Of a DNA stretch of 64,000 nucleotides, positions 290 to 32,516 are shown one piece after another; within the stretch, counting starts at the first letter, position 1, and every line of letters starts with the position of its first letter. The translations under genes were made by a program, and so were the position numbers. Below the pieces are notes generated by a model that saw only the letters and a list, made by a program, of their open reading frames with translations, was not told the DNA's origin and did not search any database. The stretch is from Octopus bimaculoides (Eukaryota). Location: positions 48,360,349 to 48,424,348 of the forward strand of contig NC_068989.1 of NCBI RefSeq assembly GCF_001194135.2, given 5' to 3'.

Positions 290-3200
290 ATTTATGGGAT
301 GACCCAATATTTCAGGAAAGATTTCTCCTTTTCAAATAGAAATGTATTGTTACTAGCAAGTGTACTTCTATAGTTTTTCATTTTATACAATACTTTAAGT
401 GAATTTGGTTGATGGAAACTGTAGGAAGCTCATCACATATGCATGTGAATGAGTTTAAACGCACACATGCAAACGTGCTAGAATGTTGATATTCCACAGT
501 TTCATTTGTCACCACCAGAATGAAATGGTGTTGATGTTTATTGTTTACATTCCTTGTTGGTGTTATGACTGGTTACTCCACCCCTTTGAGTACCTGTTGA
601 ATAAAAAAAAAATCCCAGACTTGACTTTGATTCAGTCCCACTGTGCAGTAGCTTGGGCAAGTGTTTTCTGTTATAGATCCAGGCCAGTCAAAGCTTTGCA
701 AGTAGATTTTGTTGATAGAAACTGAAAGAAGCCCATTGTGTATATGTATATAATAATTTATATATATAAAATTAATAAGGTAAAAAATGGAGAGTTGAGG
801 ACGTATAGTTAATTTATTTGTATCATAGTTTGTTGTTAAGATTTAAATACAAATAAATTTTAAAAACACAATAGAAAACTCAATAATCTACGTATTCTGA
901 CCCCTTTGTAATGCGTAATCCAAAGCATTTGGGTTAAATCCCATGTTAAGAATTTGTTATCATTTTAAGCTGTATGGGGCAGAATCTCTTCAGAGTTTCT
1001 TGTTTTGATAAAATGGAGGTTACATATTTATTGAAGGGACTCAATTCAACAACTAAAGAAGTTTAAAATGTTATTTCCTATATATTGAGTGAATGTACTT
1101 GTTAAGGTTATCATTCAAGAAAAATTAAAGATAAAATAAAATAAACATATATTTAAAAAAATATATGAATAATATGAATAATAAAATAAAAATAATGCTA
1201 TATCTGTATGGGAAAATAATCATGTAATAAAATAAATAAATTAAAAATATACAATAAATAATAAGTAATGAATAATAAATAAACCGTTATAATTGTATAT
1301 TTTCCATTGGCTCGCTATTAGATACAAGTAAATATTCATGTATATGTGTTCGTCGAATCATATCTAATCAAATTTAATCGTTTATATATATGTTAGTATC
1401 TACTCAAATTTGAATAATCTAGCCGTTAATAGATGTATCAGTCAAGTTAATATATATACATAGACTTCTATACAAGCACTTGACAACTAGTGTTGGTTTG
1501 CTTACATCCCTGTAATACAGTAGTTTAGCAAAAGAGACTGATAAAATAAGTATCAGGCTTAAAAAAAAATAAGTATTGGGGTCAATTTCTTCTGCCCTTC
1601 TAGACTGTACCCCAGCATAGTTGTTTCCCATGGACAGAAACAAATAAAAGATAAGATACTTGAAAAACCGGTGAGAGTTCTGGACAGGAAGAGCATCTGG
1701 TCATAAAATCTTACCTTAAATAAGTCCTCATGGAAAAATGGACATTAAATAAAGGAATTAATCTCATACTTTTAATGATGTCAACATTTTTATTTAACAG
1801 CAAGATCATTATAAATCATAGCTTTTAATTGTGTGTGTTTTCTTCTTTTCCCTTCTTGCAGATGTCTGTAGATGAGAATTGTGTTCAAGTGCAATGGCGA
1901 ACAAATGGTAACAATGACTTGAAAAACTTAAGCAAATATTTTAATGCCATGAATATGACAGAGATGGCAAATTGTCTTGCAAAGAAACTCGAAAAGCATC
2001 AGCTGAAAGAAATTTGCTCTAGTTGCTAAGAAATGCAACTTTGTTCTCTTTTTTTCTAAAGGAAAATTAAAGACTAATAAACGGTAACTGTTAATATTAT
2101 TTGTTCAGTTTATATTTTCTTTCGTATTTTTCTGACAACAGTTATGAAATGTAGATTTTAGGTTAAAAATTCACAAGAAACAATGTTCTTGTTGTCTAGT
2201 TCTATATCAGCTCTAATCAATCTGACCTATGGAAAAGTCATTGTATCTTTTTAGAGACTTATATTATCTAATGTGTCCTTCCTTTTTTTCTTTTGAGACT
2301 GTATGGCTTGTTTTAAGAGGGATTTAACTGTTGTTTCTAGCTAGTCAAATACCTCCACACAGACTCTCTTGTTAGCTCAATTCATAGTGGTCATGGTACA
2401 TGTGTCTTGTACTGTAGTTTCAGGTTGAACAATAACTTTTGAGTGGAATTTGGTTGGGGAGAACTGTTGTTGCATGTTGAATATTCTGTCAAAGATGTAA
2501 ATATTTGTATGAAACCCAATGGACTGATGTTCTGCAAATGAAGTCCTTTGTGATATTTGACCTTTATGAATTTAAAGATACTCCCTTGTCACTCTTGTTA
2601 GGAATGTAATGAACCAGTGACTGACCTGATGGAAACCTGTATGTAATCAATACTATTATTCACATATTGCACTATAATATATGTAAATAGATGGATGCAA
2701 GCATGGCTTTGTAGTTAAGTTTTCAGGTCTATTCTACTGAGTAGCACTTTGGCCCCATATATTCTCCTATAGTACTGTGCCAAGCAATGTCTTGTCAAGT
2801 AATTTGGTGCATAGAAGTTCAGGAAGCTTGTTTGTGTAAATATTTGTATGTGTGTGAATTAATGTTTGTATTCCATGCTTCAGCAAATTAGTGGTGATAT
2901 AGACATTATGACTTGTGGCTCTGTGCTTTCAAAAACCTCTGAATCAGAGAATCTCTTACTATAAAAAAAAAAAAATGGTGGCAAGTGATGGCCATGATTG
3001 TTTTTTGTGTGTAAGTAGAATATCAAGTATACCAAAGATGGATGATATTTGCTTTCTAATAAACATGCAGATGTACAATAAAAATGAGTTTATATAATTA
3101 AATTTAATGGTTTCAAATTTTTGCACAGTGCCAACAGTTTTTGTGGGGAAGGGGGTTAGTTGATTACATCTACTCCAGTACTTGACTAGTACTTATTTTA

Positions 3201-8035: not shown

Positions 8036-8170
8036 AATATACTGTTATGAAAGGTTTTTATTGTGCATGGGAGGTGGGAGCATAATATAAAAAAAAGGTG
8101 GTTGGGAGACTTGATTGTTGAAAACAAAAGATAAAGAGATAGTTCATTGTCAATATAGTTTTATTCCAAC

Positions 8171-8239
8171 ATGGTGGCACCAACTGTCTCATGGCATACA
8201 ACAGCTGATGATTGTGAACACATTATTGGTTTATTCGAG
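8171..8239 (+). CDS. SSAT-like first exon, copy B (MVAPTVSWHTTADDCEHIIGLFE); no downstream exons of its own found
   Basis: ATG...GAG|GTATGT donor; paralogous to 15857-15922 with homologous flanks; resembles SAT1 [22 protein letters not shown]. Confidence 0.7.
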
Positions 8240-8513
8240 GTATGTGTTGAATATTTTATGTGAAATTTTATTTGTTAATTAATTGGTAATTTGGTGGAAT
8301 TCGGCTTTATGCATGGTATATAACATTTTTATTTTTTCGAATTTTCAAAAAATTTTGTGAATTTGTGTTCAACACATGTCATTTTGCATGCTTGAAGAAC
8401 TTTCAACATATATGTTCCAACCATGACAATACCATGCAGCATTTTTTTTTACTCTCTCTTATGAACAAATGAGCAATGCAAAATATATTGAGCAACATTG
8501 TTCAACATTTTAA

Positions 8514-8547
<34 letters not shown>

Positions 8548-8578
8548 NNNNNNNNNNATATGTATATTTTTATTAATA

Positions 8579-8617
<39 letters not shown>

Positions 8618-9355
8618 ATTCTGCTTAAAGCATCTCATATAACCTCTTAACTTTTTTATTTTTGGGAATTTTCAGAAAACTTTTCCAAATTTGTGTTTTA
8701 CACACAGAAATGCATATGATTATGCAAAAAATTTCTGAAAATTAAAAAAAGTTATGAGGGGATACTTAAACCACCCAGATATGTATTTACTTCTCTTTTC
8801 ACAGTCGAACTGAACTCAAAACCATGTGGTTTGGAAGCAAACTTCAAACCACACAGCCATGCCTCCACATATATATTTATACAAAAAGATGTAATGTATA
8901 CACACACTGAGACACTTCAACTGTCAGTCCTAGTTTCTTGTATTACATTGTATTTTACTCCACTTTGATGGTTGGTTGTCAGTTCTCTACAATTATTTGC
9001 AAAATGTGTCACAGACATAACTGTATAGTTATGTAGTTTGCATTGCAATGATGTGTTAGGTTTCTATCTTACTATCACTTTAGGAAGATGCCTCCTACTA
9101 TAACTGCAGACTAACTGAGCTTTTGGTTGTAACCCATGCCAGTATGGAAAGCGGATGTTAAATGATGATGATGTATGTAAATGCTCACATTCTGTGTGTC
9201 CCTTGCTTGATACTGTGCAAGCAAAAGGATGACACTTACATTTCTTGCAAACAATACTTCCGGTCATTTTGCTTTTGCAGCGACTCAAGGAATAAAAGAA
9301 TAATTGCTTATTAAAAAAACAGAGAGACAGAAAGGATATCTGGCAGTAAAATATT

Positions 9356-9568
9356 CTTTTCTACTCTAGGCACAAGGCCCGAAATTTTTGGGGAGAGGGC
9401 CAGTCGATTAGATTGACCCCAGTATGCAACTGGTACTTAATTTATTGACCCTGAAAGGATGAAAGGCAAACTCAACCTTGGCAGAATATGAACTCAGAAA
9501 GTAAAGACAGATGAAATACTGCTATGCATTTCACCTAGTGTGCTAACGTTTCTGCCAGTTCACCACCT
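9356..9568 (-). mobile_element. SINE family 1 with 17-bp TSD
   Basis: tctggcagtaaaatatt (9339-9355) / tctggccataaaatatt (9569-9585); empty site in the paralog at 16940-16956. Confidence 0.85.
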
Positions 9569-9689
9569 TCTGGCCATAAAATATTGCTGCAGTAACTCTC
9601 TGTCCAGCCCTTACCAGTAAGGAAAAGATAACATAAAACAAACAACCTAGAGAAAGTGTCATCTACTATAACCACGGGTTAACACTGAA

Positions 9690-11419: not shown

Positions 11420-12323
11420 TAACTATACATTTATACACAACATTGTATCAAAGACATAATCCAGCAAGTAGACAGGTTTTGGGGGCTCTACAGTTACAAA
11501 TTTTATTCAGTTGCGTCCTACTATTAATGTTCTTATTTATATTTCCAGCATTATTAATATCATCAGATTGGAGTATGGTACCTGGTTTTAAATTCATTAA
11601 AGTTTGATTATTATTATACATGTCACTTTTATCTCATATCTTAGTTGTATTAGGAATTTTTAGATGATTTAGGCAGTCTGCCATTTTGAAGATTGACGTT
11701 TTTATTCCTATATCTATCAACCTCTCATTCGTTTTCTGCCTCCTATATTTATCACGCATAACTTTTTACATGGAATCCTTATTTATATGTAATTTTATAT
11801 GTATTTTTATATGCTTTTATATTTCTCTTATATTTTTATGTATGTTTGGTTTTATTCTTTATATCTTTGGAGAATTTTTATGCCTGGACATGCATGCTTT
11901 ATATTGATGTATATAAATATATAAGATTCAATTACATTGATCGAATATCTTCATTTATGTTCATGTCTTCATTTATTTTCATTTACGTGTTCGGGAATTT
12001 GGTTGATTGCGTAGGATTTGTGTTTTCATTTTCCTCTACTTTGTATAAATACACACACACACACACACATATTCACATGCGCGCACACACGCGCACACAC
12101 GCGCACACGCACACACACACACATATGTAGGTCAAATACTATAATGTTACACTTGTCCTTCAGCTGATAGTGAAAATGACATTGCCACTTTGAATTACTT
12201 GAAATTCAACACTGCATTTCCTATCAACCTCACTATCAGAGAATGAAAAAACAAGCCCAAATCTTAAGCTGATCCCTTCTCACAATAATTGAACTTTTCT
12301 AGAATTTCCATATAGAAACAAAA

Positions 12324-15300
12324 CATCATCATCATCATCATCGTTTAACGTCCGTTTTCCATGCTGGCATGGGTTGGACTGTTCGACTGGGGTCTGGGAA
12401 GCCAGGAGGCTGCACCAGGCCCCAATCTGATCTGGCAATGTTTCTACAGCTGGATGCCCTTCCTAACGCCAACCACTCCAAGAGTGCTTTTTACGTGCCA
12501 CCGGCACAAGGGGTCAGAGGAGCTGGCATCGACCACAATCGGATGGTGCTTTTTATGTGCCACTGGCACGGAAGCCAGTCAAGGTGGCACTGGCATCAGT
12601 CATGTTCGGATGGTGCTTTTTACATGCTACCGGCACGGGGCTCACAACTACAATTTCCATTTGATTCCATTTTGATATTGATGTTGATGTACTTGACTCA
12701 ATAGGTCTACTCAAGCACGCCATGTCGCCCTACGATCCAAGGTACTTTTGAGTGGGCCGGTTATGCGACAGTGGTGTAGGTTACAGCTGTGAACTCACTT
12801 TATTTGCCGGGTCTTCTCAGTCACCGCATATCTCCAGAGGTCTCGGTCTTTTGCCATTGCCTCTGTGAGGCCCAACGTTCGAAGGTCATGCTTCACCACC
12901 TCATCCCATGTCTTCCTGGGTCTCCCTCTACCCTGGATTCCTTCCACTGTTTGGGAGTGGCACTTCTTCACACAGCTCTCCTCATCCATCCACAGTACAT
13001 GACCACACCAACACAAACATCTCTCTTGCACTCCACATCTGATGCTTCTAATGTCTACCATTTCTCTCAAGGCACTTACACTCTGTCATGTGTGCATACT
13101 GACATTACACATCCTGCGGATCATGCTAGCTTAATTTCTTTCGAGCCTACGCATGTCTTCAGCAGTCACAGCCCATGTTTCACTGCCATGAAGCATGGCA
13201 GTTCACACACATGCATCATACAATCTATTTTTCACTCTGAGCGAGAGGCCCTATGTCACCAGTAGGGGTAGAAACACTCTGACCTTTGCCCAAGCTGTTC
13301 TTATTCTAGTGGTAACACTTTCTGAGCATCCAACCTCACTACAGACTTGATAGCGGAAGCTATAAACTACTTCTAGTTTCTCTCCCTTGCATGTGATGGA
13401 GTCTGTTTTCTGAGCGTCTGTGTTGTTTATTGCCTCTGTGCATCTGCTGCATGTGAAAGCGATTTCCCAGTTAATCTTCCGTTGATGTTGCTGCACCTCT
13501 TATGTGTCCATAGTTTACACTGGGTACATCTTATGGAATTTCTACCTACACATTTTCCACAGATCGAGCAGGACCACCTACCTGAAGGGGTGTGATGTGT
13601 TCACCTTCCTACTTATTAGAACTTTGGTCTTTGCAACATTGACTCTAAGGCCCTTCGATTCTAAACCTTGCTTCCAGACTTGAATTTTCTTCTCTTGTTC
13701 TGGTAGGAATTCTGCTATGAGGGCCAGATCATCAGTACCGAGGAGTTCCCAGGGACGACCTGTCTTGAATTCCTCTGTTATTGCCAGGAGGACTATGATG
13801 AATAAGAGGGGGCTAAGGGCTGATCCTTGGTGGACCTCAACTTCTACCCGGAATTCTTCACTATACTCATTTCCAATCCTAGCCCTATTGACGGCATCTC
13901 TGTATAGGGTCTGTACAGCTCTTATTAACCATTCGTCAATCTCCAGTTTCTGTATTGCTCACCAGATAAGGGATTGGGGGACCCTGTCAAAGGCTTTCTC
14001 CAAGTCCACAAAAGCTAAATATAGGGGTTTATCTTTGGCTAGGTATTTCTCCTGCAGTTGCAGTACCAGAAATATAGCATCAGTGGCACTTCTACCTGGC
14101 ACAAAACTGAACTGCATCTCATCTAAGCAGACTCTCTCCCTAGTTAGTTGGGCTATGACCCTCTCCATGACCTTCATCACCTCATCCAGCAGTTTGATAC
14201 CCCCTGTAGCTATTTCTATCTAAAGCATCACCTTTACCTTTGTAGCAGTTGACTATGGTGCTGCTACGCCAGTCATTGGATATGACTCCATCATGAACTA
14301 CCTGGTTTACAATACAGGTGACTAGGCCAAAGCCCACACCACCAGATGTTTTAAGCATCTCAGAGGTGATTCCTGATGGGTTGGGGGCTTTTCCTGGCTT
14401 CATATTCTTAATTGCTTTATCTACCAGGGTGCTGTCTATTCGGATAGCTGGTCCCTCTACTGGATCAACATTTGGCAGGCTCTCCTCCTCCTACTCATTC
14501 TCCACGTTCAACAGTCACAATGGCTCCTCCAAGCCTCTTTCTTTTCCGAATCACTAAAAGCAAGTGCACCATCATCCATGTGGACATATTTCTCTCCTGT
14601 GACATCACAATTTTCTCTCATACACTGTCTCGCAATCTGGAATACTTCAGTTCTTTGGTCCTCCTGTCACTGGACATTGGCAAACTTCTTCTATTCTGCT
14701 TCGCCCTTGGCTATGTATGCCTGTCGCCCAGCCTCCCTTTTGGCTCTCTGGTATGGTTCCCTGCTACCCCAACCCTTCCAGGCTTTCCAGGCCTGTTTCT
14801 TTGCTCTAATGGCATTGTCTACTGTATTATTCCACCACCACGTTACTCTAAGTCTGGAAGGGACTTTGCACCATTTGCAGACTTGGTCTGTGGCAGTCAG
14901 TAAGCTATCCCATAAGAATTTCCAGCTACCCTCTATGTCCAAGGACTGTAGTTCCTCCTCCCTCTCATCAAATTTCTTGATGAGGATGTCCCTAAATCTC
15001 TGACCATGTGAAGGGTTCTTTAGCTTCCAAATCCTTCTCTTGTGGATTGGTCTGCTTCAAGGCATCCTCCTGGCCTCGACTCAAAAGTCACTAATGACTA
15101 GTCTATGTTGGTGGAGTGCATTCCTCACCTGAGAGGGTCTTTGTATTTAAGAGCAACCCTGCGTCCCACTGTCTGGTGAGGATGAACTCAATCTGGCTAG
15201 CAGAGTCCTCTGATTGATAGGTTATCAAGTGGCTGTCTGGCTTCCTGAACTTAGTGTTGCAGATCAAAAGGTTACATGCATCACAGAACTCCAGTAGCCT

Positions 15301-15856: not shown

Positions 15857-15922
15857 ATGGCGCTAATTGCCTCGCGGCATGCAACAGCTGATGACTGTGA
15901 ATTCATTATTGGTTTATTCGAG
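15857..15922 (+). CDS. SSAT-like copy C exon 1 (MALIASRHATADDCEFIIGLFE)
   Basis: 66 nt, GAG|GTATGT donor. Confidence 0.8.
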
Positions 15923-18900
15923 GTATGTGTTGAATGTTTTATGTGAACTTTTATATGTTAATTAATAGGTAATATTTTATGCTAAAAAATGTTTATATCA
16001 TAAAGTCTTCGAGCGTATTCTTTTTTCTTTATCGTGACGGCCAGAACCGCAGTATGTTTTCATTTATAAACAAAGTGAGTTCGTTTATTATATTTATTTA
16101 GTTTCACCTCTTGCATTGCATCTCTTATCATGCACTCCTTTTCGGACATCCGACTTTACGGTCCGAACCAAACCAAAGTAAAAAAATATTTAAAATTTGT
16201 AAAATACTTCACTGTTGAAGTCATTTTGCATACATGAACTTTCGACGTATGTTCCGACCGTGACTGTCCCATGCGGTTTTGTTTTCAACTTTCTTATTAA
16301 TAATTAAACAATGCAAAATATATTAAACAAAATTTAATATAATTTGTGATAAATATTATTTCAACATAATACAATTCAAAATAAATACTAGTTCGTTTAG
16401 AACAAGTTTTACACCTATTACACTATTTTTCTTTTGTTTTTTCGCTCGGGTCAAGCGCTTTAGTTTAACCAAAATTTGAATTACAATATTTTTGTTGTTG
16501 TTGCTTATAATCCACCAATGGACCACGCGTGTGTTATTTGGTTTGGGATGTGCTACAAACCCCAGCCAAATCTCCCTTGAATCGTCCACCTTTTCCTCTG
16601 AAAACGATACTAATGATATTTATTCGTGTATGTACTCATTTTTTCTTTCTTTTTTTTCTCTCTTGTTTCAGTCATTTGACTGCGGCCATGCTGGAACACC
16701 GCCTTTAGTCGAGCAGATCGACCCCAGGACTTATTCTTTGGAAGCCTAGTACTTATTTTATCGGTCTCTTTTGCCGAACCGCTAAGTTACGGGGACGTAA
16801 ACACACCAGCATCGGTTGTCAAGCGATGTTGGGCGGACAAACACACACACACACATATACATATATACGACAGACTTCTTTGAGTTTCCGTCTACCAAAT
16901 CCACTCACAAGGCTTCAGTCGGCCCGTGGTTATAGGATATCTGGCAGTAAAATATTGCTGCAATAACTTTTCCAGCAAGGAAAAGTTAACATAAAACGAA
17001 CGACCTTGTGTGAGTGTTGTCTACTAAAACCACAGGTTGACCAAAGCTTTTTGAGAGGAAACTAAAAGAAGCATATTGTGAGTGTGTTTGAGTCTTTGTA
17101 TTTGTATCTCCCCAATTCCAACTTGTTAATTAATGTGGCTTGTGTATATCCCTGTAACGTAGCGGTTTGGCAAAAGAGACCGATAGAATAAGTAACAGGC
17201 TTTAAAAAAAGTACTGACAGTGTCCCAGCATGGCCATAGTCCAATGTCAGAAACAAGTAAAAGATACATAAAGACCCACACTACGAAGCACAATGTATTT
17301 TACCTCTATTCAACCCAGAAAGACATGAAAACTAACTGAAACTGCTGATGTTAATATTAAAACATTTTGATTAAAGAAAAAAAAATACCGAGAACCACTT
17401 GGATGTTTCCACTGGTAGATGGTTGGGTAGGTTATTGGAAAGAGATATAACAATCAAACCTACTGTGTGTGTGTGTGTGTATCTGTAAGAGGGAGAGAGA
17501 GATGGTATTCCATCTTGGCCTTCGTCGTAATGGCTAAATACCTAAAGAACACATGGTCTCCATCTCAGTTTCTTTTAATAAGGTTGATAAACTATTTTTT
17601 TTTTTAGCCATAATTCTGATATGTGCCACATTTGGAAAACACCTAAAGACTCATCTCACAAATAGTTCTCCCCACTACCTTTATAAAAGGTGTGTGTTAT
17701 GAGTTTTAAAAAATGTGTAGTGTGGATTTTTTATTTGGTTGATAATCCAAAACGAAAGAGCAATAGATGGATTTGTTTGGGTGTAAAGCAAAGTGCTCCG
17801 AAAGTGAAAGTAAACAACCATAAAATTTATGTAAAAACTACTTTCATAGGTACTGGCATTGTTGTATAAGAAGCTTGCTTCCCAACCACATGGTTCTGGG
17901 TTCAGTCCCACTACGTGGCACCATGGGTGAAAGTCTTCTACTATAGCCTCCGGCTGACCAAAGCCTTGTGAGTGCATTTGTTAGATGGAAACTGAAAGAA
18001 GCCTGCCATATATGTATGATTATATGTATATGTTTACATCCCTGTAACTTAGCAGTTTGGCAAAACAGACTGATAGAATAAGTACTAGACTTACAATTCA
18101 TATTGTTCCTAAAATACATGTATACTTGGACTGTGGAAAGAGAAATTTATACATGCTTTATGGCTCAGACCTTTTATCAAGTTAGAGTAGCATTTCCCAA
18201 CCTGTTTTCTCTCAGGACCCACTATAACTTTCCCAAAAAATGTATGTCTCACTACTTTTTGGTAAAAAACAACTTTATCTTTAATATCTTATCACGTTTA
18301 ACATAAAAGAATCTACTCTTTTATTAAGTACTGAGTTCAAAAAAAAGAAGTACATTATTGACAAAGAAATAAAAGTTAATCACTTTAATGAGAACCTTGT
18401 ACCAGGCGACTTCAGCACCAAGCCCTACCACATTTTTCCTTGGTCCCCACCAGTGGGGTGTATGCCCCACGTTGGGAATCGTTGAGTTAAAAAGAGAAAA
18501 GTGAAATTTTAAGAAAAAAATATTACATGCTGTTAGACAGGTGTCATTATAGTTACAGAGACAGGAAGTGGGAAGGTAGTGGTGGATTTTGAAGAGGGGT
18601 GTTGGTGAGTATGGTAGGCATTTTTTTGCCATGAATATGTTGACTGATTTATTGTTTCAGTATTTAAGGATAAATACTAAATACAGAGACTGATGATAGT
18701 TGTGTGAATAGGTCATGATGACTCAGTGATAGTATTAGCTAGATGCCATGCTCTATTATGTGTATCTTGTCATGTTCTAGTTTCTGTAAGAACTTCACGA
18801 CAAACCAATGATTGGAGCCTCTTCATAATTACTCAACCTGCTAGAAATAGCAGTCCAATCTCTAATTACTCCATACTGTCTTGAGAAAGGAAAGACTATA

Positions 18901-21900
18901 TTGAACCATTAATTCTACACACATATGGCCCAGACCATGATTATCAACATGAACATCAAACTTCAAAAAGTAGTTAGCTATTTAATGGTTTTAGTAAATT
19001 TATACAGAAAAAGTAAGCATTATACCATCCAGCATAAATAAAAGTCAACTTCACTATATTTTTTCTGTAAAAACCTATTCTGACATTAAATGAGTCAACT
19101 TCTGGTATGAATGTTTACATTTGTACATCATTTTTCAACAAAAAAGAATTTCTAAAAAATTCTGGAAACTATCTACTCATGTAATTTACGCACCCCCTAA
19201 AGTTTATTTTTGTTTTTGCAAAAGAAGTGCGTAAATTACATGGGTTTTTACAGTATATTCTATGGCTTTTCAAGGATTCCTGGATGTCTCTTAATACAAT
19301 CAATTTTCATTATAAAACTGCACCTTGTTGCCAATACCCATGGATGATCTGTATAAAGCAAACTACAAGGTCTATAACCAAACTGAATTTACATATATAT
19401 ATATAAATTGGAAATGTAAAAATAAAAACAAGACACAAAGGATTCTGTGGTACACGTGTTTCAAGCTTTTGTTTTTATTTTTACATTTCCAATTTATTCC
19501 TTCACCCCGGCCACAATCTGGCATACACAGGTGCTTATAATTATCAAGTATTACCTCTAACATTTATATATATATATAAATTGGAAATGTAAAAATAAAA
19601 ACAAGACACAAAGGATTCTGTGGTACACGTGTTTCAAGCTTTTGTTTTTATNNNNNNNNNNTTAATGCTTAACTTGCTCCAATCAGTCTTGAATGTGAAA
19701 TAATAATTAGTATATTTACAAACATGAAAATTTTGTTTTGTTGTTTGGTTGCTTACTAGTCACCAAAGCATAAAGGTGGTGTATTTGGACCAAACAGCTG
19801 GTATGAATTTCTGACTGTTGTGATCTGAATTTAACTCTTTAGTATTCAGATTACTCTGTCAAATACAATACTTATTTATTTTCATTGTTTTGAATTAATC
19901 AATCATTATCTCAAGCATTGAGATTTTGATGATGTGATTGCTTATTTTTAGAATGACATTGTTGGGTAGGTGTGGGAGGCCAGATCAAGTCATTTTGAAC
20001 ATAAAACATAAATATTTTGGCTGGTTTAAATGCAAAATGGTTAATTCCATTTGTTAAAATTCATCTGATTTATGTATCATCATTGTCATCATTATCCCTG
20101 TTTTACATATACATTTTCCATGCTGGCATTGGTTAGATTTGTCTCACTGTTTCTCATCACTTGTTGTAATTCTTCATAATCTACCACATAGAGAGAAAGC
20201 TCTGTGAATTAAGTTCAAGAGTGGCCAAGATTACTTTTGCCTTTCATCCTTTTGAGATAGTGGATTGACCAAAATGTAAGAATGTTGGATCCAACACCTT
20301 GCAGTGTTTGCTATGGTTCTCGACATTCCAAGCTCAAATCCAGCCTTGACCTACAAATTTGCCACCTGGCACTTTGGATGCTTTTATTGAAGTCCATTCT
20401 GTTGCATGTATCTGGACCAGGCTTTCAATTTGAGGATGCCTTCTTCCCCTTCACCAATGTCAGTGGATCTGTAACAAGTCATAGACACTGCCTTCTCTTG
20501 TGACTAAAAGATAAATAAAACCTGCTGATATTTGATGTGTAAGCTCTGTTTGAGTTAGCCTCTTCAAGGCTGGAATATACTTCAATACCCAACAGTTATT
20601 GACACTCTACAAAGCTCAAGTGAGGCCTACAGTAGGGTGTTGCTTTCACATCTAAGACAGTGCTGTTGCGATACACACATACATGTTCTAGACTGAATCA
20701 TGAAAATGGCTATATTGGCTGATTAGCACAAAATCACTTACAGATGCACTCCATGCTCTGGCCTACAGATGTACTGTCACCTCTGTGCTTGTTCTACTAC
20801 TATTATCATAGGGATCTTTCTTCTTCACTCCACACAAACATTCCTGTCCTACTCATCTTTTCCTCTCATCACCCTTGTTTTGTCTAACTCCAGTAGGTCT
20901 TGTAATAATCACTACACCAAGTCTTTCCTTCCCAAAATGTTGGCCTTCTTGGAATTCTATTCATACTGATGTCTCATCTGCAGATATTGACTTGCAAAGA
21001 TTCAAGTGGAACCTTAATGGCATCAATCTTGCTGGTCTAAGAAGGTTTGTGAAGGCCATGGGCACTGCACCACCTAACGACCTGCAAATATTAAAAAATC
21101 ATTCAAATACATAAGATTCTTCACTGACCTGTTTTAGCATTTAGTGAAGCTGATAGAATTGAATAAGTACATTTGTTGACAAGAGATTCGAGTTCTGAAG
21201 TTTTGAGTTAAACATCTTCTCTGAGAGGGAAATTGAAACTGCTCAAGATAGCACTGTTTCCTCAAACCCTGGGTTTATATATAAAATGTTGTGTAAACTG
21301 AAATTTATGGAGACATAGTTGTTGTTTGATTGAAGCTTCTCTACCCGTGTTGTCTACAAAAGAAAACTGAAATCATCAGTCTTTATTACCTTACTAACAC
21401 CAATTACTTTACAGTATTTACTGGCTGCATTTATTTCATGACACCACTACTAGTGAGGTCACCATGCTGCTTGGAACACTATGAACCCTGAGGAGGAGGA
21501 GGAGGAGGAGATCAGTTTTATGGTAAAGGACAAGGGGTTAAAGAATGAGAGGTGGGGTGTGGACAGAGGAGGTTCTTTACAGTAGGATGGTTACTCGCAT
21601 TTAGTAAGAGAGTAAGAGGAAGATCAGTAGGAGCTTCAAATAGATAGTGGAGATGAGACGTCCTGGTGATCTCCACCCCTCAAGGCAAGAGGTGAGTAGA
21701 AGTAGGTGGGTCGAAAGTTCGCAAGATTGTATTGAGGTACAGAGGATGGAAACTAAGACTGAACCTTAATGTTTTATAATGAAGATATTATTTAGCTTAT
21801 TCAGCATCTGTGCTGGTGGCATGACATCGAGGCAATGACAAATGACCAAGACCTTTGGCAATATGCTGTGCTTGAGAAAACCCATTAACCCTTTCATTAC

Positions 21901-23066
21901 CGTATTTATTTTGAGATGCTCTGTGTTTCTTTCAATTAATTTTAAATATAACAAAGAATTTAGTAAAATAACTTAGTTACCATTAAGCTAGTGTTAGGAA
22001 CATAAATCATGACTAAAGTTTGGTGAAAGATTTTAATTCAGAACTTATGAAAGCAAAACATTTGTACTTCAGGGCCAGAGGTGGTTTCAGCCAGGTTAGT
22101 ATTGAAAGCGTTAAGTGAAGTGAAATCATAGTCATGACAGATACTGGTGTCATGCAACTGGCACGTAAAAGCACCCATTACATTCTTGGAGTAGTTGGTG
22201 TTAGGAAGGGCATCCAGCCATAGAAACCATGCCAAATCAGCCGTGCTCAAACTTTCCAACCCATGCCAGCATGGACAACATATATTAAATGATGATGATG
22301 ATGTTTGTATTGTAACAGTACTTGAAGAGGAAACAAGCCAACTAATGGTTATATTTTTATGTCTACTTTATTTTAGATCTAAAAACCTACTGCTTCAATG
22401 GAGAGAACTTATCTAATATCCTCGTTGCTGAATGGAATCATAAAGATCCTTCAAAAGGTAAGATTTTTGTTCAGTGTTGCCTTCTTGTCTCTNNNNNNNN
22501 NNNNNNNNNNNNNNNNNNNNNNNNNNNNNNNNNNNNNNNNNNNNNNNNNNNNNNNNNNNNNNNNNNNNNNNNNNNNNNNNNNNNNNNNNNNNNNNNNNNN
22601 NNNNNNNNNNNNNNNNNNNNNNNNNNNNNNNNNNNNNNNNNNNNNNNNNNNNNNNNNNNNNNNNNNNNNNNNNNNNNNNNNNNNNNNNNNNNNNNNNNNN
22701 NNNNNNNNNNNNNNNNNNNNNNNNNNNNNNNNNNNNNNNNNNNNNNNNNNNNNNNNNNNNNNNNNNNNNNNNNNNNNNNNNNNNNNNNNNNNNNNNNNNN
22801 NNNNNNNNNNNNNNNNNNNNNNNNNNNNNNNNNNNNNNNNNNNNNNNNNNNNNNNNNNNNNNNNNNNNNNNNNNNNNNNNNNNNNNNNNNNNNNNNNNNN
22901 NNNNNNNNNNNNNNNNNNNNNNNNNNNNNNNNNNNNNNNNNNNNNNNNNNNNNNNNNNNNNNNNNNNNNNNNNNNNNNNNNNNNNNNNNNNNNNNNNNNN
23001 NNNNNNNNNNNNNNNNNNNNNNNNNNNNNNNNNNNNNNNNNNNNNNNNNNNNNNNNNNNNNNNNNN

Positions 23067-23108
<42 letters not shown>

Positions 23109-25432
23109 CAAAGCTGCAAAAATTCTCAATCTAAATTGTCTGACAAACAGGAACATGAAACTCTGAGTAGCAGTTTTTTGTGATGTATTTGCAGCTTTAA
23201 TGATAGTAAAGTATATATATATATTCGCATGCTCATTGTTTGAGTTGTCATTGTGATTTTCTTGCAGTCAACAGACCAAGCACAGGACCATTGGTTGGAT
23301 ATATGTTCTACCATTACATATACTCCACATGGGAAAGCAAGTCTATACAAATAACTGACCTGCATGTGTTACCACTACCAGAATATGAGTCCATCTGTGA
23401 AAATCTGTTTCATTTCCTGTGCAAGGTAATAGAATTTTTTTTTTTTTTGTCTTTGTATTGTAATTTGCTTCAAGCATTGCAGTATGTTTTTAAATGATAT
23501 GTTCGAAATATGTTGAGAATAAAAAGAAATTATTTCTCTATCTTTCAATACATCTCATCACTTCTAAAACAAACTTTGTTTGTTTACTTTCATCGTAAGT
23601 TGAATTTAACATTAGCGTCTTATGAAGCTAAATTTATAAGTTCTAAAATTGCAGAAGAATTCGTTACTGAGCAGTTTAGCTTAATGGTAAAGCACTTGAC
23701 GCGTAATCACAGGATGTGAGTTTGAGTCTCATAGCTGGCCAGTAGCGTATTTTTCTGCAATGTATGGATAATTTATCCTGATCACACTATTTATTAGCAT
23801 TATCACGCGTTTGAGAATAAAAAGAAATTATTTCTCTATCTTTCAATACATCTCATCACTTCTAAAACAAACTGTTTGTTTACTTTCATTGTACAGTTTT
23901 ATTTAATATAGGTTGTTTTAATGATCCTATATTTCAGGAAAGATTTGTCCTTTTCAAATAAAAATGTTATTAGCCACCTAATATAAGAGATGGGTTTTTT
24001 TCCTTTGTTTTCCTTTCTGTGTGTAGAACAACAGTGTTGAGACAAAATATTGATAGGGAAGGAGTAGAAGCAGGAACAAATTTGAAGAAGAATGATTTTA
24101 GGAAAAAGTATTCAGATGAGTGAGGGAAATTATAATGTGGGGAGGGGTGACAGCTACAGCAAGGGGATGGTAGTTTTGATAAAATTCTGGAACTTGTCCC
24201 TTGCTAAAGTAACAGTATATATGCTCTCTTGTCCTTGGAGCTTTGGTGTGCAGGTTGTGCTTTGAAAGACAAAATGGATAATAAACCTTGTCCAAGGGCA
24301 TGTCTATATAACAGTTTGATATACTGAAATATTACATAGGCATGACTGTGGTTAAGAAGTTAGCTTCAAAATTGTGGTTTTAGGTTCAATCCCATGCTGT
24401 GCATATACTGTTTTATTTAATATAGGTTGTTTTAATGATCCTATAATATTTCAGGAAAGATTTCGCTTTTTCAAGTAGAAATGTTGTCATTAGTAAGTGT
24501 GCTTCTATAGTTTCCATGCTAAATAATGCCTTATGTAAATTTGGTCAATGGAAACTGTAGGAAGTTTATCACTGTGTGTGTGTGTGTGCATGCACACATG
24601 CAAATGTGCACAACTGCTGATATTCCAGTTTCGTTTGTTACAACCAGAATGAAGTGGTGTTGATGTTTACATTCCATGTTGGTGTTATGACTGGTTACTC
24701 CATTCCTTTGCGTACTTGTTGAATAAAAAAGATCCCAGATGTGGCTTGAGTTCTGTCTCGGTGCAGCACCTTGGGCAAGTAACTGTTTTCTATTGTGGCC
24801 CCTAGCCAACTAAAGTTTTGTAAGTAGATTTGGTTGATGGAATCTAAAAGAAGCCCATTGTGTGTGTTTCTTTAGTTTGTTTCTTCTTCACCAGTGTTTG
24901 ACAACAGGTGTTGGTTTGTTTACATCCCTATAAGCAAAAGATTGATGGCATAAGTAATGGGGGGGGGGGTCAATTTCTTCAGCACTTTAAGGCTGTACCC
25001 CAGCATGGCTGCAGTCCAGTGACTGAAATAAGTCAAAAAGAAGATACTTGAAAAACAGGTAAGAGTTCAAGACAAAGGGCATCAGGTCATTAAATCTACC
25101 TGAAATTAGTTCTCATCCAGTCCATGGTTACATGGAAAAATGAACATTGAATACATGAAAAAAACCTCATATTTTTCATAATGTGCGCATTTTTATTTAC
25201 CAGCAAAATCTTCATAAGTCATAGCTTTTGTTTGTATTTTTTTTCTTTTCCCCCCTCATTGCAGATGTCTGTAGATGAGAATTGTGCCCGAGTTCAATGG
25301 CAAACGAATGGTAACAATGATTTGAAGAACTTGGGTAAATATTTTAATGCCATGAATTTAATAGAGATGGAAAGTTGGCGAGTAAAAAATTTTGAAAAAC
25401 ATCAGTTGAAAGAACTCAGCGCAACAAGTTGA
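15857..25432 (+). CDS. SSAT/diamine N-acetyltransferase-like (GNAT) gene, copy C
   Basis: Exons 15857-15922 (phase 0 end), [exon 2 not located], 22377-22457 (1->1), 23268-23425 (1->0), 25265-25432 (stop TGA). The peptides align by eye to SSAT: ATADDC..I, VGY.FY..YSTW, I.DL.V, C.R.QW, ESW. Intron phases match my recollection of the human SAT1 structure. Confidence 0.8.
16657..16933 (-). mobile_element. cephalopod-type tRNA-derived SINE (family 2: gaaactgaaagaagccc / gagaccgatagaataagtact core)
   Basis: Matches copies at 17868-18095, 28407-28745 and 39788-40153. Confidence 0.85.
17868..18095 (+). mobile_element. tRNA-derived SINE family 2, partial
   Basis: tRNA-like head gcttgcttcccaaccacatggttctgggttcagtccc. 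Confidence 0.85.
19831..20044 (+). mobile_element. piggyBac-like MITE (TTAA-flanked)
   Basis: TTAA at both ends, degenerate ccctttagcatt TIR; homologous to 40346-40569. Confidence 0.75.
20290..21115 (+). mobile_element. Jockey/CR1-group LINE RT C-terminal fragment
   Basis: YFNTQQLLTLYKAQVRP..C..I; degenerate with stops. Confidence 0.7.
22377..22457 (+). CDS. SSAT-like copy C exon 3 (DLKTYCFNGENLSNILVAEWNHKDPSK)
   Basis: ttttag acceptor, GTAAGA donor, 81 nt; matches the SAT1 DLLEDGF...CLVAE segment. Confidence 0.8.
22493..23066. other. assembly gap (N run), within SSAT-like copy C intron
   Basis: N bases. Confidence 1.
23268..23425 (+). CDS. SSAT-like copy C exon 4 (VNRPSTGPLVGYMFYHYIYSTWESKSIQITDLHVL...FLCK)
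   Basis: cttgcag acceptor, GTAATA donor, 158 nt; VG..Y...YSTW SSAT signature. Confidence 0.88.
23670..23740 (+). pseudogene. tRNA-Thr(CGT)-like degenerate sequence inside a repeat
   Basis: tagcttaatggtaaagc D-arm, CGT at 23702-23704, gtgagtttgagtctcat T-arm, agctggc acceptor 3' strand; mispaired acceptor and anticodon stems. Confidence 0.55.
25265..25432 (+). CDS. SSAT-like copy C terminal exon (MSVDENCARVQWQ...ELSATS*)
   Basis: Polypyrimidine tract + gcag acceptor, in phase with exon 4, TGA stop. Confidence 0.85.
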   Translation: MSVDENCARVQWQTNGNNDLKNLGKYFNAMNLIEMESWRVKNFEKHQLKELSATS

Positions 25433-28406: not shown

Positions 28407-28745
28407 AAGTAGCTTGCTTACCAACCACATGGTTCCGGGTTCATTCCCACTGCGTGGCACCTTGGGCAAGTGTCTTCTATTATAGCCTCGTGAATGGATT
28501 TGGTAGACGAAAACTGAAAGAAGCTCATCGTATATATGTATGTATGTGTGTCTGTTTGTCCCACCAACATCGCTTGACAACCGATGGTGGTGTGTTTACA
28601 TCCCCGTAACTTAGCGGTTTGGCAAAAGAGACCGATAGAATAAGTGTTAGGCTTACATAGAACAAGTCCTGGGGTCGGTTTCCTCGACTAAAGGCGGTGC
28701 TCCAGCATGGCCACAGTCAAATGACTGAAACAAGTAAAAGAGTAA
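28407..28745 (+). mobile_element. tRNA-derived SINE family 2, near full length
   Basis: Head with B-box-like ggttcattccc, central (TA/TG) linker, tail gaaacaagtaaaaga. Confidence 0.88.
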
Positions 28746-31023: not shown

Positions 31024-32404
31024 ACAATATCTGTATATCACTGCTAAATGCACATTTCCCATCACTTATACATAAGTGGTTGTGTAGGGGGTGGGTATCA
31101 GTTTTCCATGCTGGCATGGATTGAATGACTTGACAGGAGTTGGCAAGCCAGAGGACTGCACCAAGCTCCACTGTCTGTTTTGGCACAGTTTTTACAGTTG
31201 GATGCTCTACCTAACACCAACAACTCTACTGAGTGGGCTGGATGCTCTATATTCTAATTTTAATCATCCCGAAATTTAACCCAAACTTAGCTCAAAATGT
31301 TATTTGTAAGGGGCGTCCAGCTGTGACACACTGCCTTCAAGTCTTGCTCAAGCCAGACAGAAAAATTTAATAAATGTATGATTTTGTAATTTAGACACAA
31401 GGCCAGCAATTTTTTTTTTGAGGGGATGGAATTAGATGATACCATCAACACTGGTACTTGACAGGAAACTTTATTGACCCTAAAAGAATGAAAAATAATC
31501 TTGACTTCAGTGCGATCTGAACTCAAAACATAAAGAGCGGGAACAAATACTGCAAGGTTTTTTTTTCCTGATGCTAATTTGACTTGTAAAAATGAGGGTC
31601 GAATGGCAAATGGCACTCTTTACTCTCTAGTTCTTTAGTTCGTTGTAGCCTTCCTACCTTAATTTATGCTAGCATAGTTTCTAATAAGCCATCATATTTT
31701 GCTTTTTACTTCATTAGTCATTACATTCTAATAAATTACCAATATCCAATACTTAACTGAATAAGACAAAGAATATTTAATGTAATCAAATGTAAAACAT
31801 TTGCAAATTGGGATGAAAAACTAGATATAGAACAGTCATTAGGAGATAGTAGATTAGCAGAACCTGTAAAATACCTTGAGGAAATTTGGTCATTTTTGAG
31901 AAGAAATCCTGCTAGAGTTTTTTGGCATGTACTGTTTGCTCAACATTAATCAACTATGTATCTAAGCTTTACCCTAAATTTATGGCTTTGTGCCATTACA
32001 TATATGTAATGGCATATATAAACTTCCAAGAAAACATGAAATAATTCTTTTTTGGAATAGAGGCTCTCAAGGGCTACATTAAGGTTAGAATAAGAATTTG
32101 TAAATATTGGGTTGAAAATCCTGTTTGGATAGCAAAAAAAAAAATACTTTTCGACTTGGTATTACAAACTATTATTTATAGCTTTATGAGAATGAGGGCC
32201 CCTATTCCCAAAAAGAATGCATATATTATATGCATCTCTCTAATACAGTTCTGAGTGTATTTTTTTTTCTTTTTATGAAATATGGTAGATATCTTTGCAG
32301 ACAAAGCTTCTGATCTGCAGTCTGTAACGGATATCTGGTATTTACAAAAGAGTTCACTCAAATGAAGTTAATAATTATGAATCTAAAATATCTACTTGTT
32401 GACA

Positions 32405-32516
32405 CTATTTCCATATTCTCTTGATGACATCTGGAGATGGATCTCGTCCACGGAACATTCTGAAAATTTTGTTGGCTGATATTGAGCCACCCAATGCAAG
32501 AAATGTGTCGCGAAAT
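32405..32516 (-). CDS. oligopeptidase A-like exon 18, terminal (FRDTFLALGG...FRGRDPS...WK*)
   Basis: ccag acceptor, TAG stop at 32407-32405. Confidence 0.95.

What the first reader, a model, noticed from the sequence alone, without database searches (positions are those of the whole stretch)
15857..25432. SSAT-like GNAT gene that has lost the acetyl-CoA loop and catalytic residues but kept an intact structure: candidate pseudoenzyme family
Seen: copy C has open exons with good splice sites. Exon 4 aligns without gaps to the SAT1 segment [27 protein letters not shown] as IQITDLHVLPLPEYESICENLFHFLCK. RGFGIG becomes EYESIC (23381-23398), and the Glu92-equivalent is Thr (23354). In the last exon the Tyr140-equivalent is Gly in copy C (25334) and Ser in copy A (1931). 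Established: GNAT motif A (R/QxxGxG/A) binds the CoA pyrophosphate, and SAT1 Tyr140 is the catalytic acid. The two motif glycines are encoded TCC and TGT here, so A-to-I recoding cannot restore them. Inference: a duplicated, apparently maintained non-catalytic or neofunctionalised protein. Possible roles include a polyamine-binding sensor, a dominant-negative SSAT dimer partner or a structural protein.
Basis: partly seen in the sequence, partly recalled or inferred. Interest (0 to 1): 0.8.

Follow-up and report, generated by a model that had tools for sequence, protein, structure and literature searches.

The report
Octopus SSAT2-like gene lacking catalytic motifs
This octopus gene belongs to a cephalopod-only branch of the thialysine/diamine acetyltransferase family that keeps the enzyme fold and is conserved and transcribed, but has lost the residues that normally bind acetyl-CoA and catalyse the reaction, so databases probably give it the wrong function.

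Summary
Copy C is homologous to human SSAT2/SSAT1 (phmmer E 2.6e-10). Motif A RGxGxG reads EYESIC, the Glu92 equivalent is Thr and the Tyr140 equivalent is Gly.

There is one caveat. Four of the five coding exons are open with good splice sites. The 46-nt exon 2 is not in the assembled sequence, and homology to copy A resumes 16 nt after A's exon-2 donor, at the right edge of the N gap 19652-19661. Without exon 2 the frame stops at once. The larger gap, 22493-23066, lies inside intron 3 and the phases match.

The window is Octopus bimaculoides. Orthologues or paralogues in O. vulgaris, O. sinensis, Argonauta hians and a cuttlefish all lack the Tyr and the Glu. Motif A is lost to different degrees across them. 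dN/dS is 0.13-0.4. An O. maya orthologue is spliced and expressed in the oviducal gland. AlphaFold2 gives an SSAT fold (pLDDT 86, TM about 0.8).

Verdict: this is a maintained, coleoid-specific, catalytically degenerate SSAT2 clade and probably a pseudoenzyme. Inactivity has not been shown, and active GNATs with degenerate P-loops exist. Interest is moderate.

The parts
15857..15922 (+). Copy C exon 1 (MALIASRHATADDCEFIIGLFE), ATG start, GT donor, phase 0
   Evidence: It is 84% nt identical to copy A exon 1 and 78% to O. vulgaris exon 1, which is orthologous to A's exon 1, not C's.
19652..19661 (.). Assembly gap at the place where copy C's exon 2 (46 nt, about EQVKSGEKKNPPSVD+G) should be
   Evidence: Homology to copy A and to O. 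vulgaris begins at 19662, 16 nt downstream of their exon-2 donor. No exon-2-like peptide occurs elsewhere in the window.
19662..20009 (+). Start of intron 2, 97.4-97.7% identical to copy A's intron 2 (a recent gene-conversion tract)
   Evidence: A and C are each only 92.6% identical to O. vulgaris here.
22377..22457 (+). Copy C exon 3 ((D)LKTYCFNGENLSNILVAEWNHKDPSK), phase 1 at both ends
   Evidence: It is 98.8% nt identical to O. vulgaris exon 3.
22493..23066 (.). Assembly gap inside intron 3, flanked on the right by (TA)n. No exon is expected here.
   Evidence: The exon 3 and exon 4 phases match (G|TC = Val). The older RefSeq model P0004 joins them the same way.
23268..23425 (+). Copy C exon 4 (beta3-beta4 and the former P-loop). 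Thr replaces Glu92 at 23354-23356. EYESIC replaces RGxGxG at 23381-23398.
25265..25432 (+). Copy C exon 5 with its stop codon. Gly replaces Tyr140 at 25334-25336.
   Evidence: It is 95.2% nt identical to O. vulgaris exon 5.
1862..2029 (+). Copy A exon 5 (last exon of XP_052826634.1, 174 aa). Ser is at the Tyr140 position (1931). Copy A's other exons lie upstream of the window.
8171..8239 (+). Copy B: a lone exon-1 copy (MVAPTVSWHTTADDCEHIIGLFE, ATG, GT donor). No further exons were found.

Best explanation
Copy C is part of a tandem cluster in Octopus bimaculoides: paralogue Z upstream of the window, then copy A, the copy B fragment and copy C.

The cluster belongs to a clade derived from SSAT2/thialysine N-acetyltransferase and found, among the named hits, only in coleoid cephalopods. 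The proteins are about 173 residues long, have the same five coding exons, and are predicted to keep the GNAT/SSAT fold.

Every cephalopod member examined has lost the catalytic Tyr and the Glu92 equivalent. The octopod members have also replaced the pyrophosphate-binding loop R/Q-x-x-G-x-G/A with an acidic loop that contains no glycine.

The genes are transcribed and under purifying selection, so they are not decaying pseudogenes.

The most likely mode of action is inferred, not shown. The protein no longer performs ordinary acetyl-CoA-dependent N-acetylation. It acts instead through binding, using the retained substrate channel (the SSAT2-type YSTW motif is kept in the A/C type) and/or the dimer interface.

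Copy C's exons 3-5 are the true orthologue of the single O. vulgaris gene. Which 5' exons they are joined to in O. bimaculoides is unresolved, because exon 2 falls in an assembly gap.
For: Homology and fold
- phmmer vs PDB: SSAT2 (2bei) E 2.6e-10; a full-length alignment for the Argonauta protein E 6e-9.
- AF2 model of P0108 (exons 1-2 of A plus exons 3-5 of C): pLDDT 86.1, pTM 0.82.
- Foldseek top hits are SSAT2 and SSAT1, E about 1e-12, TM 0.77-0.85.

Degenerate motifs
- MSA A2 shows motif A as EYESIC (C, O. vulgaris), QYEFIC (A), ENEAIS (Argonauta), N/SKKSVA (cuttlefish), QKKPVA, RTQGIS and RNKGIA.
- The Tyr140 column is G/S/A/T/V/C in all cephalopod members. The Glu92 column is T/S/I/D/K.
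- No Pfam GNAT model matches. Precomputed Pfam is '-' for all cephalopod members, but PF00583/PF13508 for every canonical hit.
- In the AF2 model helix alpha3 starts 3 residues earlier, inside the former P-loop, than in a canonical gastropod control built from the same set of sequences.

Selection
- NG86 dN/dS: C vs O. vulgaris exons 3-5, 0.31 (dS 0.11; binomial P 0.017).
- C vs A, 0.38 (bootstrap 0.23-0.62).
- A vs O. vulgaris, 0.36-0.40.
- vs Argonauta, 0.13-0.21, with dS saturated.
- Exons 1, 3 and 4 are free of indels and exon 5 shows 3 gap columns, while the 150-nt flanks carry up to 27.
- Exon-intron structure and phases are identical in O. bimaculoides A and C, O. vulgaris and Argonauta.

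Expression
- The O. maya 'SAT2' RT-qPCR primers (PMC8976471) match this gene. The forward primer spans the exon 2/3 junction.
- The predicted amplicon is 127 bp, as published.

Clade
- An NJ tree groups all cephalopod members apart from the canonical mollusc, arthropod and vertebrate enzymes.
Against: - No activity or CoA-binding measurement exists.
- Active polyamine acetyltransferases of the PaiA/LcGNAT type have degenerate P-loops (PMC10416765).
- GNAT catalysis can proceed without an obvious catalytic residue (bioRxiv 10.1101/2020.05.28.120881).
- A Tyr on beta4 (the DLYV position) is kept in most members, though copy C has His. It could in principle take part in catalysis.
- The AF2 alignment is dominated by canonical enzymes, which favours a canonical fold.
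- Several dN/dS estimates rest on few differences (19 for C vs O. vulgaris) or on saturated dS.
- Expression evidence comes from another species. It is from one tissue, and the RT-qPCR difference between stages was not significant.
- Copy C's exon 2 is unread.
Confidence: 0.6

Rival explanations
1. It is still an acyltransferase. A remodelled loop binds CoA or another acyl donor in a non-canonical way, and another residue or substrate-assisted chemistry replaces Tyr140 and Glu92. In that case the family is neofunctionalised rather than dead.
For: - Degenerate P-loops occur in active PaiA-type polyamine acetyltransferases (PMC10416765).
- Some GNATs have no clear catalytic residue.
- Less-degenerate relatives keep RNKGIA or RTQGIS.
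- The Asn equivalent to SSAT Asn133, the beta4 Tyr (in most members) and the YSTW substrate motif are kept.
- Purifying selection.
Against: - Three independent catalytic or cofactor determinants are missing together.
- The octopod loop carries two or three acidic residues where the pyrophosphate binds.
- No Pfam GNAT model recognises the proteins.
- The loop sequence differs freely between paralogues (EYESIC, QYEFIC, ENEAIS, and +1 residue in Z). That is not expected for a conserved cofactor site.
Confidence: 0.25
2. Copy C as a stand-alone gene (15857-25432) is a broken or partial duplicate.
- Exon 1C and exon 1B are relics, and exon 2C is missing.
- The conserved exons 3-5 are expressed only through transcripts that start at copy A's exons 1-2, as in the O. 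vulgaris gene structure, or not at all.
For: - Exon 2 is not in the assembly, and the left flank of the gap has no homology to A or to O. vulgaris.
- Skipping exon 2 gives an immediate stop.
- The current RefSeq model for C is a 96-aa fragment that starts in exon 4.
- The 2015 model A0A0L8G6L6 joins exons 1-2 of A to exons 3-5 of C.
- O. vulgaris has one gene, with an A-type exon 1 (91.7% identity over the exon 1 region) and C-type exons 3-5 (94-99%).
- Exon 1C is the most diverged part.
Against: - Exon 1C keeps its ATG, an open frame and a consensus donor.
- Homology resumes right at the gap edge. A 97.7% A/C conversion tract next to it is the kind of sequence that breaks assemblies, so exon 2C is more likely unread than absent.
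- Even under this rival, exons 3-5, which carry all the residues in the finding, are under constraint.
Confidence: 0.15

Closest known systems
SSAT2 / thialysine N-epsilon-acetyltransferase (human SAT2, PDB 2bei; C. elegans 8yv7), with vertebrate SSAT1 more distant
   Same: - Best sequence and fold match, with the same length and secondary-structure order.
- The SSAT2-type YSTW motif is kept.
- Invertebrate SSAT-like genes are SSAT2-type; SSAT1 occurs only in vertebrates (PMC3543422).
   Different: - The motif A glycines, the Arg/Gln, Tyr140 and Glu92 are all replaced.
- There is a one-residue deletion after the Asn133 equivalent, and the Trp of the WN pair is lost.
- Pfam GNAT models do not match.
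Non-catalytic GNAT domains: the C-terminal pseudo-HAT domain of human O-GlcNAcase and the N-terminal GNAT domain of MshD (from my own knowledge, not tested here)
   Same: A GNAT fold is retained while the acetyl-CoA-binding or catalytic determinants are lost.
   Different: Those are domains within larger proteins. Here whole stand-alone genes form a tandemly duplicated, lineage-specific clade.
PaiA/LcGNAT-type polyamine or canavanine acetyltransferases with degenerate P-loops
   Same: The P-loop departs from R/Q-x-x-G-x-G/A (PMC10416765).
   Different: Those enzymes keep the catalytic Tyr and Glu and are active. The cephalopod proteins lack both.
Two-domain SSAT-like proteins of insects, e.g. 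Copidosoma floridanum XP_014219921 (P0014)
   Same: The second SSAT-like domain has a glycine-free loop (ASPGEHNSNVRDNLF).
   Different: There the degenerate copy is fused to a less degenerate first domain, whose loop reads REKHIG. The cephalopod genes are mostly single-domain, and no canonical partner was found.
Cephalopod enzyme-derived crystallins: S-crystallin from GST and omega-crystallin from ALDH (from my own knowledge, as an analogy only)
   Same: Tandemly duplicated enzyme paralogues that lost activity but are maintained in cephalopods.
   Different: There is no evidence of lens expression or abundance here. The only expression datum is from the oviducal gland (PMC8976471).

Membership tests
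GNAT superfamily | GNAT alpha/beta fold (b1-a1-a2-b2-b3-b4-a3-b5-a4...) | tested here: met
   AF2 pLDDT 86.1, with DSSP element order the same as the canonical control. Foldseek finds SSAT2 and SSAT1 at TM 0.77-0.85. This is a prediction only, and the alignment is dominated by canonical members.
GNAT superfamily | Motif A / P-loop R/Q-x-x-G-x-G/A that binds the CoA pyrophosphate | tested here: not met
   EYESIC in C, QYEFIC in A, ENEAIS in Argonauta.
GNAT superfamily | Match to Pfam Acetyltransf_1 (PF00583) or related models | tested here: not met
   hmmscan at E<=10 finds no GNAT family for A, for the Argonauta protein or for the C peptides. Precomputed Pfam is '-' for the cephalopod members, while all canonical hits have PF00583/PF13508.
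SSAT / thialysine acetyltransferase family (SAT1/SAT2) | Significant full-length sequence homology | tested here: met
   2bei E 2.6e-10 and 6.2e-9 (residues 4-158); SSAT1 E 1e-4 to 5e-5.
SSAT / thialysine acetyltransferase family (SAT1/SAT2) | Catalytic Tyr (SSAT1 Tyr140) | tested here: not met
   Gly (C), Ser (A), Ala (Argonauta), Thr (Z), Val/Ala (cuttlefish). The Tyr two residues downstream is Ser in O. vulgaris and O. sinensis.
SSAT / thialysine acetyltransferase family (SAT1/SAT2) | Glu92 (water-mediated general base) | tested here: not met
   Thr in all octopod A/C and Z members; S/I/D/K in the other cephalopod members.
SSAT / thialysine acetyltransferase family (SAT1/SAT2) | Acetyl-CoA-dependent N-acetylation of thialysine or polyamines | not testable with these tools
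   Needs a recombinant protein assay.
Pseudoenzyme (maintained, catalytically degenerate homologue of an enzyme) | Purifying selection and conservation across species despite loss of catalytic motifs | tested here: met
   dN/dS 0.13-0.40. Present in Octopus spp., Argonauta and Acanthosepion.
Pseudoenzyme (maintained, catalytically degenerate homologue of an enzyme) | Expressed | tested here: inconclusive
   The O. maya orthologue was detected by RNA-seq and by RT-qPCR with a junction-spanning primer (PMC8976471). No expression data for O. bimaculoides copy C itself could be examined.
Pseudoenzyme (maintained, catalytically degenerate homologue of an enzyme) | Demonstrated lack of catalytic activity | not testable with these tools
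   Not measured anywhere I could find.
Unprocessed pseudogene | Frame disruption or neutral evolution | tested here: inconclusive
   There is no stop or frameshift in exons 1, 3, 4 or 5, and dN/dS is below 1. Exon 2 is unread (gap 19652-19661), and its absence would truncate the protein.

The most novel reading that the evidence does not exclude
Coleoid cephalopods may have no canonical thialysine/diamine acetyltransferase at all. Their only SSAT-family genes would then be this clade, which lost Tyr140 and Glu92 in the coleoid ancestor and later, stepwise, the CoA-binding loop. The clade would have been retained for a non-catalytic role, for example binding polyamines or basic amino acids in the female reproductive tract during sperm storage. 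The clade also tends to form tandem arrays with read-through two-domain products.
Probability: 0.2. Interest if true: 0.65.

Novelty: new variant of a known kind. Interest (0 to 1): 0.45.

Why it matters
RefSeq names these genes 'thialysine N-epsilon-acetyltransferase', 'diamine acetyltransferase 2-like' or 'speG'. At least one paper (PMC8976471) interprets up-regulation of the O. maya orthologue as polyamine metabolism.

If the proteins cannot bind acetyl-CoA or catalyse transfer, that inference is wrong.

The graded series within one animal class offers a natural experiment in how a GNAT enzyme becomes a non-enzyme and what the fold is then used for. The series runs RNKGIA, RTQGIS, QKKPVA, SKKSVA, EYESIC, with the Tyr and the Glu already gone in all of them.

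The question can be tested directly with simple recombinant assays.

Tried and rejected
1. tblastn of human SAT1 against the window gave nothing significant, and SAT2 hit only exon 4. Homology became clear only with the spliced peptide.

2. The in-frame 'HCL' just upstream of the exon 4 acceptor, which tblastn extended into, is intronic. The true FxILVAEW segment is in exon 3.

3. The search for exon 2 in the assembled sequence was negative. The best hit, at 63720, is unrelated.

4. The idea that the KYF Tyr substitutes for Tyr140 was rejected, because it is Ser in O. vulgaris and O. sinensis.

5. A possible 6-nt LP duplication shifting the P-loop register makes no difference. Neither register yields a glycine.

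6. Searching for a canonical cephalopod SSAT found none.
- The search for homologous proteins with a gastropod enzyme returned only 10 hits.
- The profile search and the cluster look-ups named no cephalopod canonical enzyme.
- This is not proof of absence.

7. Contig look-ups for P0105 and P0108 found nothing on record.

8. Literature searches for a described cephalopod SSAT pseudoenzyme found nothing.
Full report
**Source and locus**

The window is Octopus bimaculoides chromosome CM046609.1 (GCA_001194135.2). Window position 1 corresponds to position 14314 of locus L001. The region is AT-rich animal DNA with many interspersed repeats and five N gaps.

**Checking the observation**

Exon 4 of copy C (23268-23425) encodes (V)NRPSTGPLVGYMFYHYIYSTWESKSIQITDLHVLPLPEYESICENLFHFLCK. 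Exon 5 (25265-25432) encodes MSVDENCARVQWQTNGNNDLKNLGKYFNAMNLIEMESWRVKNFEKHQLKELSATS*.

- The stated coordinates are right: EYESIC at 23381-23398 (Ser TCC, Cys TGT), Thr at 23354, Gly at 25334, and Ser at 1931 in copy A.
- tblastn with human SAT1 finds nothing significant.
- The spliced peptide matches human SSAT2 (2bei) at E 2.6e-10 and SSAT1 at about 1e-3. The alignment has no gap across the P-loop region (RGQGIG/EYESIC) and places Gly opposite the catalytic Tyr.
- MAFFT alignments with 5 and 37 sequences give the same equivalences.

The homology and the substitutions are therefore real and not a chance resemblance.

**The assembly gaps**

RefSeq and GenBank proteins found with the peptide gave the full gene structure:

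- copy A: XP_052826634.1, 174 aa
- the Argonauta hians orthologue: GAB1603423.1, 171 aa

Both have five coding exons with identical phases, and so does the O. vulgaris gene.

Copy C has these exons:

| Exon | Window coordinates |
|---|---|
| 1 | 15857-15922 |
| 2 | not in the assembled sequence |
| 3 | 22377-22457 |
| 4 | 23268-23425 |
| 5 | 25265-25432 |

All four assembled exons have consensus splice sites.

The 574-N gap (22493-23066) lies inside intron 3.
- Copy A's intron there is 363 nt and holds no exon.
- The exon 3 and exon 4 phases fit (G|TC = Val).
- An earlier RefSeq model joins them in the same way.

The 10-N gap (19652-19661) is the problem.
- Exon 2 is 46 nt and encodes EQVKSGEKKNPPSVD plus one base in copy A.
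- It is absent from the assembled copy C. A six-frame BLOSUM scan finds no candidate.
- Homology to copy A (97.4%) and to O. vulgaris begins exactly at 19662. That is 16 nt past their exon-2 donor.
- The left flank of the gap is not homologous to either.
- Joining exon 1 directly to exon 3 reads GAG|ATC TAA, an immediate stop (sequence).

Exon 2C is therefore probably unread rather than lost. The neighbouring near-identical A/C tract is the kind of sequence that breaks assemblies. But copy C's complete reading frame cannot be certified. The current RefSeq model for C is only a 96-aa fragment that starts in exon 4.

**Family and distribution**

A full HMMER scan of 1.84 billion representative proteins gave 99 hits. 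Names were recovered from cluster look-ups.

The closest relatives are all cephalopod:

- O. vulgaris and O. sinensis C-type proteins (EYESIC; 'LGKSFNAM')
- Argonauta hians (ENEAIS)
- a more divergent paralogue Z in O. bimaculoides, O. vulgaris and Argonauta, with a one-residue-longer loop (EVTEHKENIL)
- a two-domain Acanthosepion pharaonis protein (NKKSVA and SKKSVA)
- unnamed transcriptome proteins (QKKPVA; RNKGIA)
- a third Argonauta paralogue (RTQGIS)

In the 37-sequence alignment every one of these lacks the Tyr140 equivalent and the Glu92 equivalent. The canonical enzymes keep RxxGxG, the Tyr and the Glu. These come from gastropods, a crustacean, insects and vertebrates.

A rough NJ tree puts the cephalopod sequences in one clade.

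No Pfam GNAT model matches any cephalopod member, while all canonical hits carry PF00583/PF13508.

I found no canonical cephalopod SSAT among the named hits. That is not proof of absence.

**Evolution of the local cluster**

In O. vulgaris (locus L003) paralogue Z is followed by a single A/C-type gene. After that comes a Peptidase_M3 gene on the opposite strand. The same neighbour is seen in Argonauta and, by collinearity, in this window from about 32.4 kb.

- The O. vulgaris exon 1 region is orthologous to copy A (91.7%, one gap). It is only about 80% identical to C.
- Its exons 3-5 are orthologous to copy C (94-99%), against 80-89% for A.
- Synonymous distances agree: C vs O. vulgaris dS 0.11; A vs O. 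vulgaris 0.34-0.41; A vs C 0.33-0.36.

So the A/C duplication predates the split of the two species. The O. vulgaris gene looks like an A-5'/C-3' hybrid. That is what unequal recombination in intron 2 would produce. The A/C conversion tract (97.7%) in O. bimaculoides sits at that same spot.

The 2015 O. bimaculoides model A0A0L8G6L6 has the same hybrid composition. Copy B is a lone exon 1.

**Selection**

Nei-Gojobori dN/dS values:

| Comparison | dN/dS | Notes |
|---|---|---|
| C vs O. vulgaris, exons 3-5 | 0.31 | 11 nonsynonymous and 8 synonymous differences; binomial P 0.017 against neutrality |
| C vs A | 0.38 | bootstrap 0.23-0.62; P 0.001 |
| A vs O. vulgaris | 0.36-0.40 | |
| C vs Argonauta | 0.21 | dS saturated |
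| A vs Argonauta | 0.13 | dS saturated |

Between A and C, exons 1, 3 and 4 carry no indels and exon 5 shows 3 gap columns, while the 150-nt flanks carry up to 27 gap columns. This excludes simple neutral decay for the coding exons that hold the degenerate motifs.

**Expression**

The Octopus maya oviducal-gland study (PMC8976471) lists RT-qPCR primers for 'Diamine acetyltransferase 2'.

- The forward primer matches the exon 2/exon 3 junction of this gene with one mismatch and has no genomic match.
- The reverse primer matches exon 4 with one mismatch.
The A-type would give 130 bp.
- The transcript was up in mated females by RNA-seq. The RT-qPCR trend was not significant.
- The authors read it as polyamine metabolism.

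**Structure**

AlphaFold2 was run on the hybrid full-length protein (exons 1-2 of A plus exons 3-5 of C) with a 109-sequence alignment.

- It gave pLDDT 86.1 and pTM 0.82.
- Foldseek returns SSAT2 and SSAT1 as best matches, E about 1e-12 and TM 0.77-0.85.
- A control model of a canonical gastropod enzyme, built from the same set of sequences, has the same order of secondary-structure elements.
- In the control, helix alpha3 starts 3 residues later and a short 3-10 turn plus a loop cover R-G-K-G.
- In the octopus model the helix begins at Tyr105, inside the former P-loop.

This is a prediction made with a canonical-dominated alignment. It supports an intact fold with a remodelled loop, and no more than that.

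**Interpretation**

Shown:
- real SSAT2 homology
- loss of three canonical determinants
- conservation of those losses across coleoids
- purifying selection
- a spliced transcript in a congener
- a predicted intact fold

Inferred:
- loss of ordinary acetyl-CoA-dependent catalysis
- a binding-based role

The acidic, glycine-free loop varies freely between paralogues. That argues against a conserved cofactor site.

On the other side, active PaiA-type enzymes have degenerate P-loops (PMC10416765). GNAT chemistry can also be undemanding. A neofunctionalised transferase therefore remains a serious rival.

The dominant-negative idea lacks a candidate canonical partner.

**Novelty and score**

- The genes are already annotated by homology.
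- GNAT pseudo-domains are known.
- SSAT2 itself is well characterised.
- I found no description of a catalytically degenerate SSAT2 clade in cephalopods.

I rate this a new variant of a known kind and of moderate interest. It has practical value for annotation and for studying how an enzyme becomes a pseudoenzyme.

Noticed in passing
window 8171-8239 (flanks 8108-8499, 9333-9683): Copy B is an exon-1-only copy of the gene with ATG and GT donor intact. Part of intron 1 is homologous to copy C's intron 1. No exons 2-5 lie between it and copy C. A 10-N gap flanked by (TA)n follows at 8548-8557.
   Followed up: partly
window 19662-20009 vs L001 11500-11848: This intron-2 segment is 97.7% identical between copies A and C, yet each is only 92.6% identical to O. 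vulgaris. That indicates recent gene conversion. It sits next to the gap that hides exon 2 and at the apparent A/C recombination point of the O. vulgaris hybrid gene.
   Followed up: yes
window 4844-4990 and 5221-5613: The older RefSeq model XP_014783682.1 used a first exon at 4844-4990, spliced to copy C exon 3. That exon lies next to a 130-aa ORF that looks to me like a transposon fragment (it ends ...DIVIKDYNRGTCLLIDISVPQDQN; no search run), so the old 5' end is probably spurious or a chimera with it.
   Followed up: partly
window ~12300-15000: A GC-richer block (42-46% GC, against about 35% elsewhere) has several 110-170-aa ORFs on the + strand between copies B and C. It is probably a transposable-element insertion. 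It was not identified.
   Followed up: no
window 16662-16935, 28484-28734, 39866-40142 and others: A repeat family of about 250 bp (73-89% identity) is scattered in both orientations through the window, including copy C's intron 1. It is also present in the O. vulgaris locus.
   Followed up: no
window ~32400-33974 onward (- strand); L003 52701+; L002 17706+: A Peptidase_M3/TOP_N (thimet-oligopeptidase-like) gene lies downstream on the opposite strand. The same neighbour follows the SSAT-like gene in O. vulgaris and Argonauta hians, so synteny is conserved.
   Followed up: partly
L003 10001-46336 (O. vulgaris); O. sinensis XP_036362831.1 and P0127; Acanthosepion CAE1317262.1: Gene models repeatedly fuse neighbouring paralogues (Z exons 1-4 to C-type exons 2-5) or encode two tandem SSAT-like domains (cuttlefish, 318 aa). 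These could be read-through transcription or annotation artefacts. This is unresolved.
   Followed up: partly
window 23258-23269; L001 13015-13025; L003 43982-43991: The acceptor of exon 4 is tag|cag in O. vulgaris (both forms are annotated, 173 and 174 aa). Copy A's annotated model uses the tag acceptor. It is ttgcag in copy C, which can use only the downstream AG, so copy C is one residue shorter.
   Followed up: yes
proteins P0014, P0024, P0093 (e.g. Copidosoma floridanum XP_014219921.1): Insect two-domain SSAT-like proteins have a second domain that also lacks the P-loop glycines. This suggests independent degeneration of SSAT-like domains outside cephalopods.
   Followed up: no
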